DNA of 64,000 bases from Scyliorhinus canicula. Taxonomy: Eukaryota. Position numbers and translations under genes: made by a program. Of this stretch, positions 16,557 through 53,840 are shown one piece after another; position 1 is the stretch's first letter; each line of letters begins with the position of its first letter. Where the stretch lies: contig NC_052158.1 of NCBI RefSeq assembly GCF_902713615.1, forward strand, positions 64,819,791 to 64,883,790. The letters are read 5' to 3'. The notes under the pieces are model-generated. The model searched no databases, was not told the DNA's origin, and was given only the letters and a program-made list of their open reading frames with translations.

Positions 16557-16774
16557 GTGAGTGAAACACGGAAAGCAAGCCGTGTTTACACATACATTTG
16601 CAAGATGAAGGGAATGAGCATTAGATTTCCATGCAGTATTCGCGATTCTTCATTTTTTTATGAGCCAGTGTGTTTTAATATGTTGGGATTGTACAGAGCT
16701 GGATGAAGTAATCCTGGTCCCACTCGATGGCTGCCTACATTGGCTCACTAAAAGAGGTCTTATGCCTAAATAGA

Positions 16775-18101
16775 AACATGGAAAATAAGAGCAGGAGGAG
16801 GCTGTTTGGCCCTTTGAGCCTGCTCTGTCATCCATTTTGATCATGGCTGGCCCTCCAACTCCGTAACCTGTTCCCGCTTTTTCCCCCTTTTCCTTTGATC
16901 CCTTTACCTCCAAGAGCTAGATCTAACTCCCTCTTGAAAACATGCAATGTTTTGGCCTCAACTGCTACCTGTGGTAGCGAATTCCACAGGCTCCCACTCT
17001 CTGGGTGAAGAAATTTCACTTAATCTCAGTCCTAAAAGGTTTACCCTGTCTCCTTAGAGTGTAACCACTGGTTCTGGACAGCCCCACCATCAGGATCGTC
17101 CTTCCTACATCTACCCTGTCTAGTCCTGTTAGAATTTTATAGGTTTCTGTGGGTTCCCCCCCACCTCATTCTTCTGAACTCCAGTGAATATAGCTCTAAC
17201 AGACTCGATCGCTCCTCGTATGTCAGTCCTGCCATCCCAGGAATCAGTCCAGCAAATCTTCTCTGCGCACCCACTATAGCGAGAACATCCTTCCACAGAT
17301 AAGGTGACCAAAACTGTATGTAATATTCCAGGTGTGGCCTCACCAAGGCCGCATATAATTGCAGCAAGACATCCCTGTTCCTGTGTTTGAATTCTCTTGC
17401 TATGAAGGTCAATGTACCATTTGCCTTCTTTACTGCCTGCTGCACCTGCATGCTTTCCCTCAACGACTGGTGTACAAGGACATCCAAGTCTGGTTGCACA
17501 TTCCCCTCTCTTAAATTATAGCCACTCCGATAATCTGCCTTCCTGTTTTTAGTACCAAAGTGGATATCTTCGCATTTATCCACATTATACTCCATTTGCC
17601 ATGCATCTGCCCACTCACTCAACTTGTCCAAATTACACGGAAGCATCTCTACATCCTCCTCACAGCTCTCACCCCGCCTCCCTCCGCAAACCATCCAGCT
17701 TTGCGTCATCTACAAATTTAGAGATACTACATTTATGAAAAATGAAAATCGCTTATTGTCACGAGTAGGCTTCAATGAAGTTATTGTGAAAAGCCCCTAG
17801 TCGCCGCATTCCGGCTCCTGTCCGGGGAGGCTGGTACGGGAATCAAACCGTGCTGCTGGCCTGCTTGGTCTGCTTTAAAAGCCAGCGATTTAGCCCAGTG
17901 AGCTAAACCAGCCTCTTATCTAACCAGTTCCCTATCTAAATCATTGATATATATTGTGAATAGCTGGATCCTAGCACCGAACCCTACGGTACACCACTAA
18001 GCACTGCCTAACAATCCGAAAAAGATCTGTTTATTCCTACTCTTTGTTCTCTGCCTGCCAACCAGTTTTCTATCCATCTCAATACACTGCCCCCAATCCC
18101 A
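16775..18101 (-). mobile_element. CR1 LINE 3' part (RT C-half, 3' UTR) of the chimeric CR1-MHC element
   Basis: (H)GIGGSVLRW...GVP.G, FVDDAKL, ORF 17137-17709 with QQAVKKANG, LVRPHLEY; CR1-type 3' tail near 16775. Confidence 0.88.
17735..17915 (-). mobile_element. tRNA-derived SINE inserted into the CR1
   Basis: Reverse complement of gaggctggtttagctcactgggctaaatcgctggcttttaaagc...gtgacaataag. Confidence 0.85.
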
Positions 18102-18526
18102 GGACTGGTTGGTCCTGGACATGAGGGTCGGAATATCAACTTTGAAAAACTGCTCCTGCTCCCATGCGAGAAACTTCTTCCGTTCCCAGGATTTAGGACC
18201 CTCGCTGTCCACCATCCACTGCTCCTGGGGAATCAACTCCTTCCGATTGTTGTCGTACACAACAAACTGCACATCGTCCACATAACCGACAATCACGAAC
18301 TCCAATAATCCAGGGATTGGAGACATACCCGTGAAGAAATACCGGAGAGAATGAGAGCCTGCAGACACCTGTCCACACAGAAGGAGCAGAACTATCAGTC
18401 CAATCATTGTTCCTTTCCTCAGGCTGGAGGAAATATTTCAAGTGAAATTTTTCTCTAAGAATAGGGAAATTTTCAACTTGGAAGTTCCATCTTGTCTTGT
18501 TCACAGTGAGCCTCAATCGGATTGGC
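18102..18526 (-). pseudogene. MHC class I heavy-chain fragment (119-nt 5' leader + signal peptide + alpha1), intronless, embedded in CR1
   Basis: ATG at 18407. 102 open codons MIGLIVLLLLCGQVSA-GSHSLRYFFTG...FVIVGYVDD..F..YD...W....W...LMSRTNQS, with class I alpha1 hallmarks (SHSLRYF, VGYVDD, NQS glycan site). Leader joined directly to alpha1; no alpha2/alpha3. Confidence 0.92.
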
Positions 18527-18880
18527 CTCTACCTCCCTTCTTAAATAATGGGTTTCCAGTAACTACCTTCAAACCTGCAGGAGCTGTTCCAGGGTCTATA
18601 GAATCTTGGAAGATGACCACCAATGCATCCACTATTTCTAGAGCCACTTTCTTAAGAACTCTGGGATGTAGATTATCAGTCCCTGGGGATTTATCAGCCT
18701 TCAATCACATCAATTTTCCCAAATACCATTTCTCTACTAATACTGATCTCCATCAGTTCCTCCCTCTCACTGAACTGTGTGCTCCCCAGAATTTCTGATA
18801 TGTTATTTGTGCCCTCTTTCGTGTAGACAGAACCAAAGTATGTATTTAGTTGGTCAACCATTTCTTTGTTCCCCTTCAAT
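18527..18880 (-). mobile_element. CR1 LINE 5' part (pre-RT) of the chimeric element, 5'-truncated
   Basis: GNKEMVDQLNTYFGSVYTKE..., KADKSPGTDNLHPRVLK..., PLFKKGGR, ending at the MHC junction. Confidence 0.88.
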
Positions 18881-19009
18881 TCAGTTCACCTGCCTTTAGC
18901 TACTCTGAAGCTGGGTGAACATTTTACTTTTTGAGGTGCTTTACATTTCACTAAAACGGTTCTGCTGTCAGGTTAAGAATGCCAGTTTTAGCCACATAAA
19001 TATGGGCGG

Positions 19010-19730
19010 AGTCATAGATGTCCACAGCACAGAAAAGGCCATTCAGCCCAACGCGTCTGTGTCGGTCAAAAAACAACCACTAAGTATTCATTTTTCAGCA
19101 CTTGGCCCATAGCCTTGTATGCCCTGTCATTGCATGTGCACATCTCCTCTCCTGTTCAATGTTATGAGGGTTTCTGCCTCCACCACTCTTTCAGGTAGAG
19201 AGTTCCAGACTCCCATCACACTCTGGGTGAAAATGTTTTTCCTCTCATCCCTTCTCAACCTCCTGCCCCTTCCCTTAAGTCTATGCTTCCTGGTCATTGA
19301 CCCCTTCATCAAGGGAAAACTTTCTTCCTGTATACTATGACCTTCATAATTTTATACATCTGAACCGTGTTCCCTCCTTCAATCTCCTCTGCTCCAAGGA
19401 AAACAACCCCAGTCTATCAAATCTCGGTTCATAACTAAAACTCTCCATTCTGGTAAATCTCCTCTGCACCCTTTCCAATGCTGTCACATCCCCCCCCCCC
19501 CCCTATAATGTGGATTCCAGAACTGCACCCAGTACTCTACGTGCGACCGAATCAAAGTTTTATACAGTTCCAGCAAAATCTCCCTGCTCTTAAACTCTGT
19601 GCGTCGGTTAATTATGGCAAGCATACCATCGGCCTTAACTACTATATCCACCTGCTCTGCTATCTTAAGGGATCAGTGTACATGCACACTAAGATCCTTC
19701 TCATCCTCGGTGCTAACCAGAGTCCTGCCG
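19010..19730 (-). mobile_element. CR1 LINE 3' fragment
   Basis: TRKHRLKGRGRRLRRDERKNIFTQSVMGVWNSLPERVVEA is typical of the CR1 C-terminus. Confidence 0.7.
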
Positions 19731-39090: not shown

Positions 39091-40215
39091 TCACGTAATG
39101 GGACAGCAGACAGAACTGGCCGTGGTGCTCTGCTCCACCCGAGACTGGGGGGGTAAATGCGGAATATTGTGGAGTAACTCACGCATCGTAAACAGGCTAA
39201 ATGCTATTTTCTCATAAGGCGATTTGGATCCACATTCGTAAAGACAAGCGAACGCCACCGCTGGGAGCTGAGCCTCACTGAATTTGGTGGAGGCCAACTC
39301 AATGAATGCCAGGTCAGAGTAAGCACTGGGTCCTTCGTGGATAATCCAGGGCTCCGTCCAACTGCCGGGGTCCTGCGGGTATGTACTCAAATAAACTCCC
39401 AGGTGGAGCCGTGATGCTGGGCTTGTTGGGTGAGAGTAGAGAACCCAAGTTGGCGTCTGGAAGCGGAGAGTCAAGCATTTTTGCTGGGGTTGTGTTGGCT
39501 GATGGTTTTCAGAGTCAAAGCCAGGCCTGACTGATAGCTCCTCACACCACGGGACAATGGGGGCTGGGAAACCAATGACACTCCCATGGCATCCGCGGGG
39601 TGGTTCCACCAGCTTTGGGACAAACTGCCCTTCCTGGAAGACAGCACCACCATCTGCACTGAGTGCCTGAGCCCTGAAGTTCATTGGTGTCCTGGCATTA
39701 CAGTAAAGGACACTGTGGCCATCTTCCTCATCCACGGAAACCACCTGGCACTCCACCGTCTGCAGATTGTCTACAAAGTCCCCAAACTTCCAGACCTTGC
39801 CATGGTCATCACTGTAAAACGTGAAGGAGTGAGGGCTGCACCTACAGATTGTTCCAAAACACTCTTTAGAGTCAATATGATAGGCGTACGCTGGGATAAC
39901 AAGTCTCCCAGACTTGAGCTGGATCCCATGTCCTGGGCCCAAGGCGAAGGTTGCCCATTCTTCAATGGAGCAGCCAATGGTGCTGCCAGTCAGATCAGTG
40001 ACGGCACTCCAGCTCCGGCCCTGGTCAGTGCTTCTCACACAGCACAGGCGAGCCACGTTGTCGCCCGTGATGAGTTGATACGACTCTGTGGTGCGCCCCA
40101 GGATGGCAACGAAGAGAAGGAAGAGTGTGTTGGTAGAAGTGTCATACACAGGGCATGGGTTCATGGACCGGTGACCCTCTAGATGGGCAGAGTGGAGAGT
40201 TTCCATATCCTCCCA
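39091..40215 (-). CDS. NEU4: Sialidase-4 (neuraminidase 4), large terminal coding exon (374 aa + stop)
   Basis: tcttcctctgtttcag|TGG GAG...TGA. Asp boxes STDQGRSW, SDDHGKVW, SADGGAVF; RSMNPCP, GPGHGIQL, CNAR, AYSDL, YECG. The ECFG.IC..SPHSF..YSDDHG insert is NEU4-like. Confidence 0.93.
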   Translation of the reverse strand, partial: WEDMETLHSAHLEGHRSMNPCPVYDTSTNTLFLLFVAILGRTTESYQLITGDNVARLCCVRSTDQGRSWSAVTDLTGSTIGCSIEEWATFALGPGHGIQLKSGRLVIPAYAYHIDSKECFGTICRCSPHSFTFYSDDHGKVWKFGDFVDNLQTVECQVVSVDEEDGHSVLYCNARTPMNFRAQALSADGGAVFQEGQFVPKLVEPPRGCHGSVIGFPAPIVPWCEELSVRPGFDSENHQPTQPQQKCLTLRFQTPTWVLYSHPTSPASRLHLGVYLSTYPQDPGSWTEPWIIHEGPSAYSDLAFIELASTKFSEAQLPAVAFACLYECGSKSPYEKIAFSLFTMRELLHNIPHLPPQSRVEQSTTASSVCCPIT

Positions 40216-41189
40216 CTGAAACAGAGGAAGAAAAGACAATTAAAGTGAGAAATGGGTTCAAGCTGGCGATCAACAGCACGATTTTCAGATCTCTGTAACC
40301 AGCTAGAATGTCACAGGCTTACCCAGTGTAACTGGTGGGAGAACAGCAGCCCCAGAGAAATGCCAAAAGTATCTATTTTTCTGGAGGTTTATCAATTTTC
40401 CACCAATTACAGTAGATGATCGAGACCACAGCTTCCAATTATTTCACTCCCACTTTTATTAACTAAAACTCTGGAGGTGACGTGAACAAAGCTAATTATG
40501 TTAAAACTCATACTTTATATCGGTCATCCATCAAAATTCTACATGCCTTCAAAAAGCCAAACTGGGTTTTGATTTTACCTCAACACTGTGACCTTGCCCT
40601 CTGTTCGTTCATTGCGACAATTGCAAAGATCCTCACATGAAGTGCTGAGCTGTCATCCCTGAACATCTAACCCAGTGTTGTCCCACCACCCCCTCACATC
40701 AGTCAAACCCACTTTTCACACCCCCGTCACCCAACAAGTCATTGACCCAAAAGGAAGCCGCCTACCTTCAATTGGACAAAAAGTTAAATGGTGGTCAAGT
40801 CTCAAATTAATTTTGTAATAACTCATTTTAATCATATTTCCCTGCAGTGAACTTGCTCATTAGAAAGTCCAACTCTTACAGAAATCCGTCCGGAGGCTCC
40901 CCACACAGGTTGTCTAGGCCTCCAGTATTAACCAGTTAGGTTTGCCATTCCATAACTTAGCATACCAAAAGGAACTCTGTTGGAAGTTAAAGGTTTATAA
41001 TTGTCACCTCACTAGTCCAAGTGCTCCCTCCCACAATCACTCACCAAAATGTATAACGTGGGAACAAGTACAGGCAAGTTGCAGGGTATACCCCTGATGG
41101 ACACACACCCATCTCTAATCCTAAACAACCCATTTATATCTGTGTGTTGCAAATCATTTGATGTGCAGAAGTTGCATGCAAATATTCAT

Positions 41190-51725: not shown

Positions 51726-53840
51726 TCACGCAATGGAGAGGGCCATACGGCAGGGCAAGGTTTATAATTGGGGGAGGGGTAATTATGGTGCGATTAGGGA
51801 GCATAAGATGGGAACAGAAACTGTCAGGGAAAGGCACAAATGAAAAGTGGAGCTTGTTCAAGGAACAAATACTGTGTGTCCTTGATAGGTATGTCCCTGT
51901 CAGGCAGGGAGGAAATGGCCATGTGAGGGAACTGTGGTTCACAAGAGGTTGAATGTCTTGTCAAGAGGAAAAAGGAAGAGTATGTAAGGATGAGAAAACA
52001 AGGTTCAGTTGGGTCGCATGAGGGGGCATGAGAAGTCCTTGGCGGGTCGGATCAAGGAAAACCCCAAAGCTTTTTGCTCTTATGTGAGAAATAAAAGAAT
52101 GACCAGGGTGAGATTAGGGCCGTTCAAGGACAGTAATGGGAACTTGTGCATGGAGTCAGAAGAGATAAGAGAGGCATTGAATGAATACTTTTCTTCAGCG
52201 TTCACCAAGGAGAGGGGCTATGTTTTTGAGGATGAGAGTGTGATACAGGCGGGTAAGCTAGAGGAGGTAGATGTTCTGAGGAAGGATGTATTAGCAATTT
52301 TGAAAAATCTTATAGAGTCGACAAGTCCCCTGGGCCCGATGGGATATATCCTCAGATTCTTTGGGAGGCAAGGGATGATATTGCAGAGCCTCTGGCTTTG
52401 ATCTTGGGGTCCTGATTGTACACAGGGATAATGCCAGAGGACAGGAGAGTGGCGAATGTTGTTCCTCTGTTCAAGAAAGGGAATAGGAATGACCCTGGTA
52501 ATTATAGGCCGGTTAGTCTTACTTCGGTGGTCGATAAGTTAATGGAAATGATCCTGAACTATAGGATTTATGACCATTTGGAAAGATGCAGCTTAATCCG
52601 GGGTAGTCAACACGGATTTGGAAAGGGTAAGTCTTGCCTCACAAATTTGATTGAATTCTTTGACGAAGTTACTAGGTGTGTAGATGAAGGTAGAGCATTT
52701 GATGTCGTATACATGGATTTTAGTAAGGCGTTTGATAAAGTTTCCCACGGTCGGCTCATGAAGAAAGTAAGGAGGTGTGGGATAGAGTGAAATTTGGCCA
52801 ATTGGATAAGTAACTGGCTATCACATAGAAGACAGAGGGTGGTGATGGATGGAAAATTTTCAGATTGGAGACAAGTTACCAGCGGTGAATCATAGGGATC
52901 AGTGCTGGGTCCTCTGCTATTTGCGATTTTTATCAATGACTTGGAGGAGGGGGCTGAAGGGTGGGTCAGTAAATTTGCTGATGACACCAAGATTGGTGGA
53001 GTAGTGGATGAGGTGGAGGGCTGTTGTAGGCTGCAAAGAGACATTGATAGGATGCAGAGCTGGGCCGAAAAATGGCAGATGGAGTTTAACCCTGATAAGT
53101 GCGAGGTGATTCATTTTGGTAGGAAAAATCTGAATGCGGATTACAGGGTCAACGGCAGGGTTCTGAGGAATGTGGAGGAACAGAGAGATCTTGCGGTTCA
53201 TGTCCACAGATCTCTGAACGTTGCCATTCAAGTGGATAGAGCCATGAAGAAGGCCGATAGTGTGTTAGCGTTTATTAACAGGGGGCTTGAGTTTAAGAGC
53301 TGTGGGGTTATGCTGCAACTGTACATGACCCTGGTAAAACCACATTTGGAGTATTATGTGCAGTTCTGGTCACCTCACTATAGGAAGGATGTGGAAGCAT
53401 TGGAAAGGGGATTTACCAGGATGCTGCCTGGATTGGAGGGTAGGTCTTATGAGGAAAGCTGGAGGGAGCTCAGGCTTTTCTCTTTGAAGCGGAGGAGGAT
53501 GAGACGCGACTTAATAGAGGTTTATAAGATGGTGAGGGGGATAGATAGAGTGGACGTTCAGAGACTATTTCCTCGGGTAGATGTAGCTGTTACAAGGGGG
53601 CATTACTATAAGGTTCAGGGTGGGAGATATTGGAGGGATGTCCGAGGTGGGTTCTTTACTCAGAGTGGTTAGGGTTTGGAATGGACTGCCTGCTGTGATA
53701 GTGGAGTCGGACACTTTAGGAACTTTCAAGCTGTTATTGGATACACCAGAATGAGAGGGAGTGGGATAACTTGATCTTGGTTCGAACAAGGCTCAGCACA
53801 ACATCGAGGGCCGAAGGGCCTGTTCTGTACTGTTCTATGT
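51726..53840 (+). mobile_element. CR1 LINE, ORF2 (end of EN, RT, C-terminus) and 3' tail; a possible 5' UTR piece at 50811-50976
   Basis: PLFKKGNR..PGNYRPVSLTS, QHGF, DFSKAFD, LGPLLF..FINDL, KFADDTK, LVKPHLEY; tail gggccgaagggcctgttctgtactgttctatgtt. Confidence 0.92.

What the first reader, a model, noticed from the sequence alone, without database searches (positions are those of the whole stretch)
16775..18880. CR1-MHC class I-CR1 chimera: a host immune mRNA fragment substituted into a LINE RT
Seen on minus: CR1 ORF2 runs to PLFKKGGR (18527), switches to 425 nt of non-CR1 sequence containing MHC class I leader+alpha1, then resumes CR1 at (H)GIGGSVLRW (18101) and continues to a CR1 3' tail. 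Using the CR1 at 52416-52790 as a ruler, about 96 codons (about 290 nt, including YRPVSLTS, QHGF and DF.KAFD) are replaced rather than merely interrupted; there is no TSD or poly(A) at the inner junctions. Inference: a double template switch during target-primed reverse transcription (CR1 RNA to class I mRNA and back). This is more complex than the usual bipartite chimeras. If multicopy, it would be a CR1 derivative that disperses MHC alpha1 fragments.
Basis: partly seen in the sequence, partly recalled or inferred. Interest (0 to 1): 0.82.

Follow-up and report, generated by a model that had tools for sequence, protein, structure and literature searches.

The report
MHC class I mRNA piece inside CR1
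A dead, single-copy CR1 retrotransposon in this shark genome has about 280 bases of its reverse-transcriptase gene replaced by a spliced piece of an MHC class I messenger RNA. This is most likely a scar of the copying enzyme hopping between RNA templates; it is a tidy example of a known process, not a new mobile family.

Summary

**Structure, minus strand:**
- CR1 runs 18874-18527.
- 423 nt of class I mRNA follow at 18525-18103: 5'UTR, leader and alpha1, with exon 1 and exon 2 joined without their intron.
- CR1 resumes at 18101 and runs to a canonical CR1 tail near 16770.
- A separate SINE is nested at 17926-17736.

Colinear CR1 copies show that 267-288 nt of CR1 are missing where the class I piece sits. 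Both flanks match the same CR1 copies at similar identity.

- The chimera is single-copy, so it is not a dispersing family.
- The class I piece stops 5 nt before the exon-2 donor, so this is not a splice join.
- The proposed GGGAT microhomology is not the crossover. The overlap is at most CA.

**Read support:** Independent runs span the 5' junction and the intronless join. No listed contig spans the 3' junction.

**Mechanism:** The piece is 5'-complete and 3'-truncated with no poly(A), which rules out ordinary poly(A)-primed insertion. A GAPDH::CR1 chimera elsewhere in this genome shows the same kind of switch. I favour one CR1 insertion event with two template switches (about 0.55). Later capture of class I cDNA at a break in an existing CR1 copy cannot be excluded (about 0.27).

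Double template jumps by LINE reverse transcriptases are already published. Interest is modest.

The parts
18527..18874 (-). CR1 ORF2 segment (5'-truncated element start; ends ...PLFKKGGR). The reading frame is broken by at least one frameshift.
   Evidence: It is 84-86% identical to many genomic CR1 copies over window 18874-18527. Homology starts at 18874 in most copies and at about 18892-18895 in two; nothing significant lies further upstream.
18526..18526 (-). Orphan G at the CR1-to-class I junction.
   Evidence: Six of seven CR1 copies read A here, and the class I gene promoters read T. It could be an untemplated or cap-derived base, or a later A>G change. This is inference.
18359..18525 (-). 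Class I exon 1 equivalent: 118 nt upstream of the ATG (18407), plus the leader MIGLIVLLLLCGQVSA.
   Evidence: It is 80-82% identical to exon 1 of four class I genes at C13:32.3-32.5 Mb. All four alignments start at the same base, 18525, while the genes stay similar to each other further upstream.
18103..18358 (-). Class I exon 2 equivalent (alpha1 domain), joined directly to exon 1 and open throughout.
   Evidence: Pfam MHC_I E 3e-19, profile positions 1-88. It is 88% identical to exon 2 in L003, ungapped. It ends 5 nt before the exon-2 donor of the genes.
18102..18102 (-). Junction base C. Both parents read A here (class I ..GTCA.., CR1 ..GCA|TGGG..).
   Evidence: Fifteen of 16 CR1 copies have CA before TGGGATT. 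Four of the five class I genes and the processed copy L002 read TCA here; L006 reads TCG.
17927..18101 (-). CR1 resumes at (H)GIGGSVLRWIENWL... This stretch contains two stops and a frameshift.
   Evidence: It is 80-88% identical to CR1 copies. In copies such as L033 and L034 this segment begins 288 nt after the point where the 5' part stops.
17736..17926 (-). Nested tRNA-like SINE, a separate later insertion.
   Evidence: The CR1 copies are contiguous across this point (L033 1467 to 1469). The SINE is 94% identical to the copy in L002. ARAGORN calls no tRNA.
16770..17735 (-). CR1 3' part, with the ..FVDD.. region, a 3' stem and an octamer-like tail (..TTTCCATGTTTCTATTT).
   Evidence: It is 77-82% identical to CR1 copies right up to their 3' ends. 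Other copies end in TTTCTATG-type repeats. The stem is predicted but not significant by energy, z -1.3.
17997..18407 (-). 136-aa ORF: leader plus alpha1, running out of frame into CR1. Probably of no function.
   Evidence: The CR1 frame stops four codons into the class I 5'UTR, so no ORF2-class I fusion protein is encoded.
18942..18956 (-). Candidate upstream copy of a target-site duplication (TTTTAGTGA-AATGTA). Weak.
   Evidence: A 9-mer plus a 6-mer are shared with 16753-16736. It lies 50-65 nt from the last solid CR1 base, so it may be chance.
16736..16753 (-). Candidate downstream copy of the same duplication (TTTTAGTGAGCCAATGTA). Weak.
   Evidence: It lies about 17 nt beyond the CR1 tail.

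Best explanation
This is one CR1 retrotransposition event in which the reverse transcriptase changed template twice.

**Proposed sequence of events.**
1. Target-primed reverse transcription began on the 3' tail of a CR1 RNA and copied about 1.13 kb of it, now 16770-18101 without the later SINE.
2. At the codons for ..KIKAH|GIGG.. the enzyme left the CR1 RNA. It continued on a spliced MHC class I mRNA, entering 5 nt upstream of the exon 2/exon 3 junction, with a CA overlap at most.
3. It copied exon 2 and exon 1 up to, or close to, the 5' end of that mRNA.
4. It then went back to CR1 RNA about 280 nt upstream of where it had left, and copied at least another 348 nt before the insertion was sealed.

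The product is a dead, single-copy, 5'-truncated CR1 that lacks the RT finger/palm motifs and carries leader plus alpha1 instead. A SINE inserted later.

**Shown:** the architecture, the spliced origin, the colinearity, the uniqueness, and the absence of poly(A), TSD or splice joins at the inner junctions.

**Inferred:** that both switches belong to one event, and that the upstream end of the class I piece is the mRNA 5' end.
For: - The class I piece is intronless, whereas the genes have 1.4-4 kb first introns.
- It is 5'-complete and 3'-truncated without poly(A). That is the opposite of a poly(A)-primed processed pseudogene. It is what copying from an internal entry point toward the mRNA 5' end produces.
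- It lies in the same orientation as the CR1, as template switching requires.
- Both CR1 flanks are colinear. They match the same copies at similar identity: L033 83.0/84.7/80.5% and L034 81.5/80.7/79.3%. No further CR1 of this subfamily was found within 8 kb downstream or 5 kb upstream.
- The element ends in a genuine CR1 3' tail.
- Precedent in the same genome: a GAPDH mRNA 5' part, starting at the same base as a processed GAPDH copy and truncated inside the CDS, is fused co-directionally to a CR1 3' part that ends in a CR1 tail. Its CR1 entry point is only about 24 nt from the one used here.
- Divergences are mutually compatible with one age. CR1 against its best copies is 14-18%, and the class I piece against the nearest genes is 12-19%.
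- Double template jumps during LINE reverse transcription are documented (PMC2104539).
Against: - No orthologous empty or CR1-only allele could be examined, so a one-step event cannot be told from a two-step one.
- The second switch lands on an internal CR1 position without visible microhomology, which is less typical than end-to-end jumping.
- The class I piece begins only 4 nt after a TATA-like motif of the gene promoters. The processed class I copy on C9 starts 60 nt further in. The piece may therefore start upstream of the main transcription start.
- The class I ORF is intact while the CR1 frame is broken several times. With about 103 codons this is not significant.
- No clear TSD brackets the whole unit.
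- No listed read contig spans the 3' junction.
Confidence: 0.55

Rival explanations
1. Two steps. An ordinary 5'-truncated CR1 copy inserted first. Later a double-strand break inside it was repaired with loss of about 280 bp, and the gap was filled with class I cDNA. In this model the broken DNA end primed reverse transcription on the mRNA through a 1-2 nt overlap, and the cDNA was joined to the other end by end joining.
For: The structure is equally compatible with this model: replacement rather than insertion, minimal overlap at one junction, and one odd base at each junction. CR1 is abundant in this genome, and other retro-insertions do land in CR1 copies, for example the GAPDH copy in L042 and PEX19 in L041. 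The class I ORF is intact while the CR1 frame is decayed.
Against: This model needs the break to fall in a CR1 and the cDNA to land in the sense orientation, each by chance. The GAPDH::CR1 chimera shows that the CR1 machinery itself produces the same 5'-complete, 3'-truncated mRNA pieces. There is no sign that the class I part is younger than the CR1 part.
Confidence: 0.27
2. Two CR1 copies. A bipartite chimera (class I 5' part plus CR1 3' part, from one switch) inserted next to or into an older CR1 copy. The insertion deleted the rest of that older copy, so the upstream 348 nt belong to a different, older element.
For: Bipartite chimeras of exactly this kind exist here. LINE insertions can delete target DNA (general knowledge of L1 studies).
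Against: Both flanks have the same orientation and colinear coordinates, and the same copies match both flanks at similar identity. No remainder of an older CR1 lies downstream of 16770, so a deletion of at least about 1.7 kb would be needed.
Confidence: 0.07
3. Splicing. A class I pre-mRNA was spliced, in cis or in trans, from the exon-2 donor into a CR1 transcript, and the hybrid RNA was then retrotransposed. This is the model proposed for some L1 chimeras with first exons.
For: The piece consists of the first two exons and ends close to the exon-2 donor. L1 chimeras of first exons ending at splice donors are described (bioRxiv 10.1101/2025.02.02.635956).
Against: The last 5 nt of exon 2 (AGGAG) are absent. 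Fifteen of the 16 CR1 copies read CA, not AG, before the join, and the sixteenth reads AA. Splicing would also not explain the upstream CR1 part.
Confidence: 0.03
4. Assembly artefact, or a DNA-level copy (replication template switching) from another intronless class I copy.
For: No listed contig spans the 3' junction. One processed class I pseudogene exists on C9.
Against: The 5' junction and the intronless join are seen in independent studies. The C9 copy is only 82% identical and starts 60 nt further in, so it is not the donor. No other intronless copy was found.
Confidence: 0.05

Closest known systems
Tripartite chimeric retrocopies from double template jumps during LINE reverse transcription (WEIRD/Mg-SINE/MGL in Magnaporthe; B2/U6/L1 in mouse; PMC2104539)
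   Same: Three directly fused, co-oriented retro-transcribed parts with the LINE 3' end at the 3' side. There is no poly(A) between the parts. The explanation is two template changes in one TPRT event.
   Different: Here the first and third parts are the same LINE, so the enzyme returns to CR1 RNA, skipping about 280 nt. The LINE is CR1, not L1 or MGL. The middle part is a protein-coding mRNA fragment. No convincing TSD brackets the unit, whereas the fungal and mouse cases have 14-16 bp repeats.
Bipartite mRNA/snRNA::LINE chimeras (U6-L1 and relatives), and the GAPDH::CR1 chimera found in this genome (L047, C336:3627506-3630688)
   Same: A 5'-complete, 3'-truncated cellular RNA copy is fused in sense to a 5'-truncated LINE 3' part. 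The junction overlap is 1-2 nt.
   Different: Those end at the 5' end of the cellular RNA. The window's element continues with a further CR1 segment upstream.
L1 chimeras carrying the first exons of genes, some ending exactly at splice donors (bioRxiv 10.1101/2025.02.02.635956)
   Same: First two exons of a gene, in sense orientation, fused to a LINE.
   Different: The join here is 5 nt short of the donor and there is no acceptor in CR1. The LINE part is strongly truncated rather than near full length.
Poly(A)-primed processed pseudogenes nested in CR1 (GAPDH in L042, PEX19 in L041, class I on C9 in L002)
   Same: A spliced host mRNA copy. The GAPDH and PEX19 copies also lie inside a CR1 and are co-directional with it.
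   Different: Those keep the mRNA 3' end. The GAPDH and PEX19 copies carry AATAAA and poly(A), and GAPDH also has a 13-nt TSD. The window's piece lacks the entire 3' two thirds of the mRNA and has no poly(A).

Membership tests
LINE template-switch chimeric retrocopy (bi/tripartite) | Parts are copies of different transcripts, fused directly and in the same orientation. | tested here: met
   CR1 / class I mRNA / CR1 all lie on the minus strand, with at most one odd base at each junction.
LINE template-switch chimeric retrocopy (bi/tripartite) | The 3'-most part is a LINE 3' end with its own tail, where TPRT starts. | tested here: met
   CR1 homology runs to the 3' ends of other copies, and the octamer-like tail is present.
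LINE template-switch chimeric retrocopy (bi/tripartite) | The cellular part is processed (intronless) and has no poly(A) of its own at the junction. | tested here: met
   Exons 1 and 2 are fused, whereas the genes have 1.4-4 kb introns. There is no A-run at 18103.
LINE template-switch chimeric retrocopy (bi/tripartite) | One target-site duplication brackets the whole chimera. | tested here: inconclusive
   The only candidate is a 15-of-18 repeat, and both of its copies are displaced from the CR1 ends. I expect clear TSDs to be uncommon at CR1 insertions (my own knowledge; not tested here).
CR1-clade LINE | Reverse transcriptase domain. | tested here: met
   The RT core is the part that is missing here. 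Colinear copies encode YRPVSLTS, QHGF and DF.KAFD. The window's second CR1-like element has Pfam RVT_1 at E 7e-13.
CR1-clade LINE | A 3' hairpin followed by an 8-nt microsatellite tail (ATTCTRTG type in amniotes; PMC5729268). | tested here: met
   Copies end in TTTCTATG-type repeats, and the window ends ..TTTCCATGTTTCTATTT. A stem is predicted just upstream but is not significant by energy alone.
CR1-clade LINE | Placement of the RT in the CR1 clade rather than L2 or Rex1. | not tested
No repeat library or RT phylogeny was run.
MHC class I gene | Alpha1 domain with leader. | tested here: met
   Pfam MHC_I E 3e-19, profile 1-88. It is 75-88% identical to exon 2 of five genes.
MHC class I gene | Alpha2, alpha3 and transmembrane exons are present. 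| tested here: not met
   The sequence switches to CR1 at 18102. This is a fragment, not a gene.
Spliced (cis or trans) exon::LINE chimera | The exon ends exactly at its donor, and the LINE part starts after an AG acceptor. | tested here: not met
   The piece is 5 nt short of the donor. CR1 copies read ..GCA|TGGG.
Poly(A)-primed processed pseudogene | mRNA 3' end, poly(A) and TSD. | tested here: not met
   None is present. Compare L042, which has all three.
Mobile chimeric family | Several copies share the junctions. | tested here: not met
   Only the window itself matches across both junctions in the 4.2-Gb assembly.

The most novel reading that the evidence does not exclude
The catshark CR1 reverse transcriptase would regularly make excursions onto cellular mRNAs at internal sites. 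Sometimes it would return to its own RNA, possibly from a preferred exit region around ..KIKAHGIGGSVLRWIENWL.., where two independent chimeras leave CR1 within about 24 nt of each other. That would make CR1 a poly(A)-independent route for scattering 5' exon blocks in CR1-rich genomes. Those blocks can carry promoter-proximal sequence and a signal peptide, as with the open leader+alpha1 ORF seen here.
Probability: 0.2. Interest if true: 0.55.

Novelty: new member of a known kind. Interest (0 to 1): 0.36.

Why it matters
CR1-type LINEs recognise their own 3' end and are thought to copy host mRNAs only rarely. This argument is used to explain why birds have few retrogenes (Suh 2015, cited in PMC5729268). 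This locus and the GAPDH::CR1 chimera show that, in a shark, CR1 can still pick up host mRNA segments through template switching. The pieces produced are 5'-complete and 3'-truncated, with no poly(A).

The locus has no evident immune function. It is a fossil of a class I lineage whose nearest gene in this assembly is only 88% identical. It could serve as a clean presence/absence marker and as a test case for one-step versus two-step origin.

Tried and rejected
- **CpG decay as a relative clock for the class I and CR1 parts.** The class I exon 2 keeps as many CpGs as the live genes, but so does the older C9 pseudogene. All CR1 copies are CpG-poor. The comparison is uninformative.
- **TSD search.** It gave only a weak, displaced candidate.
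- **CR1 homology upstream of 18874.** It looked plausible by eye but is not significant.
- **A 5'-truncation hot spot at the CR1 exit point.** Rejected, because all 16 copies examined continue upstream.
- **PEX19 'CR1-mRNA-CR1' chimera, taken from an earlier scan note.** I verified it structurally. It has AATAAA plus A7 and a T-rich target, so it reads better as a poly(A)-primed insertion with a 20-nt target deletion. It is not clean support for the template-switch mechanism.
- **GAPDH copy in L042.** It looked at first like another sandwich, but it is a plain insertion with a triple 13-nt TSD.
- **Exact-protein look-up of the 136-aa ORF in public assemblies.** Nothing is on record.
- **Protein database search with leader+alpha1.** It returned only a 72% partial Scyliorhinus torazame entry, because the length window excludes full-length class I proteins.
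- **Transcription start.** Only indirect evidence was obtained: three small, probably RNA runs hold 31-mers from the first 72 nt of the L009 exon 1.
Full report
**What is there**

Read on the minus strand, the region is a 5'-truncated CR1 LINE with a foreign block in its reverse-transcriptase gene.
- The CR1 coding sequence ends with ...PLFKKGGR at 18527.
- A single unassignable G follows at 18526.
- Positions 18525 to 18103 are MHC class I.
- One ambiguous base sits at 18102.
- From 18101, (H)GIGGSVLRW..., the sequence is CR1 again. It runs down to a CR1 3' end at about 16770.
- A 191-nt tRNA-like SINE sits at 17926-17736. CR1 copies elsewhere are contiguous across that point (L033 1467 to 1469), so it is a separate, later insertion.

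**The class I block**

The 136-aa ORF 18407-17997 hits Pfam MHC_I at E 3e-19, covering profile positions 1-88, which is alpha1.

In the window's own assembly (4.2 Gb; the window is C13:64.82-64.88 Mb), class I genes cluster at C13:32.08-32.53 Mb.
- Exon 1 of those genes matches window 18525-18358 at 80-82%.
- Exon 2 matches 18361-18103 at 75-88%. Three nt at the join fit either exon.
- The genes separate these exons by 1.4-4 kb in the three pairings I trust. In the window they are joined exactly as splicing would join them..TCTGCAG|GCTCTC...

The block is therefore derived from a spliced mRNA.

The nearest gene exon 2 is only 88% identical and the nearest exon 1 is 81-82%. The source lineage is either not in this assembly or has diverged.

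**What is missing from CR1**

Five CR1 copies that cover both sides without other insertions (L015, L022, L026, L033, L034) carry 267-288 nt between the two break points. That stretch encodes YRPVSLTS, QHGF and DF.KAFD. It corresponds to the first half of Pfam RVT_1 in the window's second CR1-like element.

The same copies match both flanks at similar identity: L033 at 83.0/84.7/80.5% and L034 at 81.5/80.7/79.3%. The best genomic hits are 86% for the upstream flank and 82% for the 3' part. I see no sign that the flanks differ in subfamily or age. No further CR1 of this subfamily lies within 8 kb downstream or 5 kb upstream.

**The junctions**

*Upstream junction.* The window reads ..GGTAGAG-G-CCAATCC... 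CR1 copies continue ..GGTAGAG-A-GAAAAC... The gene promoters read ..GTGT-CCAATC... There is no overlap and one orphan G.

*Downstream junction.* The spliced mRNA reads ..ACCAGTCAGGAG|GGATCC.., the bar marking the exon 2/3 boundary. Fifteen of 16 CR1 copies read ..CA|TGGGATTGG... The window reads ..ACCAGTC-C-TGGGATTGG...
- The class I part therefore stops 5 nt before the exon-2 donor.
- The overlap is CA at most, with the A now a C.
It lies 3 nt beyond the crossover and is not retained, so it is not the junction. At best it is a nearby similarity that could have helped acceptor choice (inference).
- The last 5 nt of exon 2 are absent and CR1 has no AG at the join. A splice-mediated fusion of the kind proposed for some L1 chimeras therefore does not fit.

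**Copy number and reads**

A 501-nt query across both junctions finds only itself. All other hits are class I only or CR1 only. The element is not a dispersing family.

Contigs of public runs of the same species were laid on 16700-19050.
- X1 (18370-18583) and X8 (18386-18584, a different study) span the upstream junction without mismatch.
- X7 (18227-18542) and X2 (18129-18502) span the intronless exon join.
- X7 differs at five positions, so it is another individual's allele.
- Position 18226 is a T/C polymorphism at a CpG.
- No listed contig spans 18102, and the closest stops at 18113. The 40 nt of CR1 after the junction are identical in many copies, which breaks short-read contigs. The downstream junction therefore rests on the assembly alone.

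**Mechanism**

The decisive feature is the polarity of the class I piece. It has the 5' end of the transcript, lacks everything from the end of exon 2 onward, and has no poly(A). A poly(A)-primed processed pseudogene has the reverse polarity.

This genome makes such ordinary copies.
- A full-length class I pseudogene lies on C9.
- Four of five independent GAPDH retrocopies are ordinary processed copies that reach the poly(A) region.
- One of these sits inside a CR1 with AATAAA, poly(A) and a 13-nt target duplication.

The fifth GAPDH copy (L047, C336) is different. A spliced GAPDH 5' part begins at the same base as the processed copy and breaks off inside the CDS. It is fused in sense to a CR1 3' part that runs to a CR1 tail, with a TG overlap. 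Its four copies are 99.2% identical over 3.2 kb, so they represent one event that was later duplicated.

This is the classic product of a reverse transcriptase switching from LINE RNA to an internal site of another RNA and running to its 5' end. Its CR1 exit point (..|WIKSWL..) lies only about 24 nt from the one in the window (..H|GIGGSVLRWIENWL..).

The window's element looks like the same first switch followed by a second one back to CR1 RNA, about 280 nt upstream of the exit. Tripartite chimeras explained by double template jumps have been described in a fungus, mouse and human (PMC2104539). CR1 template switching has been invoked for avian SINE origins (PMC5729268).

**What I could not settle**

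A two-step origin gives the same architecture. In that model a CR1 copy inserts first. Later it breaks, loses about 280 bp, and is patched with class I cDNA primed from the broken end. Only an orthologous CR1-only or empty allele would decide between the models.

Several attempts to separate them failed.
- Relative dating by CpG content was uninformative.
- The divergence levels of the parts are compatible with a single age.
- The intact 103-codon class I frame against a broken CR1 frame is not significant.
- A bracketing TSD is not convincingly present.

Whether 18525 is a true transcription start is also open.
- It lies 4 nt after a TATA-like motif of the gene promoters.
- The C9 pseudogene begins 60 nt further in.
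- Three small, probably RNA data sets contain 31-mers from the first 72 nt of the L009 exon 1. This argues weakly that the stretch is transcribed.

An earlier scan note pointed to a 'CR1-PEX19-CR1' chimera. I located and confirmed it. It carries AATAAA plus a short poly(A) and a T-rich target, so it reads better as a poly(A)-primed insertion with a 20-nt target deletion. I do not count it as support.

**Verdict**

The reading is partly supported: an RNA-templated origin and template switching are well supported, one-step double switching is favoured but not shown, multicopy spread is refuted, and the proposed microhomology was corrected. The element is a new example of a known kind of LINE-mediated chimera. 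It is of modest interest, mainly as evidence that CR1 can capture host mRNA pieces without poly(A).

Earlier agents of this scan name the genome as the small-spotted catshark. I did not verify this beyond a best protein hit from Scyliorhinus torazame.

Noticed in passing
L047 = G000:C336:3627506-3630688 (also L045, L046, L049): GAPDH::CR1 bipartite chimera. A spliced GAPDH 5' part (L047 834-1671) is fused in sense to a CR1 3' part with a canonical tail. A 16-nt tandem duplication sits at the GAPDH 5' end. Four copies are 99.2% identical over 3.2 kb, which indicates segmental duplication on unplaced scaffolds.
   Followed up: partly
L042 = G000:C16:136332836-136336309 (minus strand): Full-length processed GAPDH copy with an uninterrupted 346-aa frame, AATAAA and poly(A). 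A SINE with poly(A) sits beside it. Both lie inside a CR1, and the 13-nt GTATGTTCAAGGC is present three times. This suggests two successive insertions at one target, or a possible intact retrogene.
   Followed up: partly
L041 = G000:C27:18198584-18202249: PEX19 retrocopy (Pfam Pex19 2-247, one stop) lying co-directionally inside a CR1. About 20 nt of CR1 are lost, and there is AATAAA plus A7 but no TSD.
   Followed up: yes
L002 = G000:C9:107509764-107513123 (about 1500-2560): Complete processed MHC class I pseudogene (leader, alpha1, alpha2, alpha3, TM contiguous, with stops). It is 82% identical to the window's piece and starts 60 nt further into exon 1.
   Followed up: partly
window 18159-18207 (run X2): One contig is identical to the window over 18227-18502 but carries 11 clustered differences in the alpha1 helix region. 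Several of them restore residues conserved in the live genes. It may be a related expressed class I allele, or a contig that mixes two sequences.
   Followed up: partly
window as a whole (C13:64.82 Mb) versus C13:32.08-32.53 Mb: The retro-fragment lies on the same chromosome as the class I gene cluster, 32 Mb away. By chance this would be roughly 3%. No explanation is offered.
   Followed up: no
window 19030-19312, minus strand: The 3' end of another CR1-like element (..FTQSVMGVWNSLPERVVEAETL..) lies directly upstream of the chimera, in the same orientation.
   Followed up: no
window 52009-53672, plus strand: A second CR1-like element of a different subfamily, with Pfam RVT_1 in two frames. 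It served as the ruler for the missing RT segment.
   Followed up: partly
window 39091-40239, minus strand: A 382-aa open frame that looks like a large sialidase (NEU-type) exon.
   Followed up: no
G000:C10:3.86-4.10 Mb and C10:50.6-50.75 Mb: Many near-full-length intronless actin matches, in clusters and with open frames.
   Followed up: no
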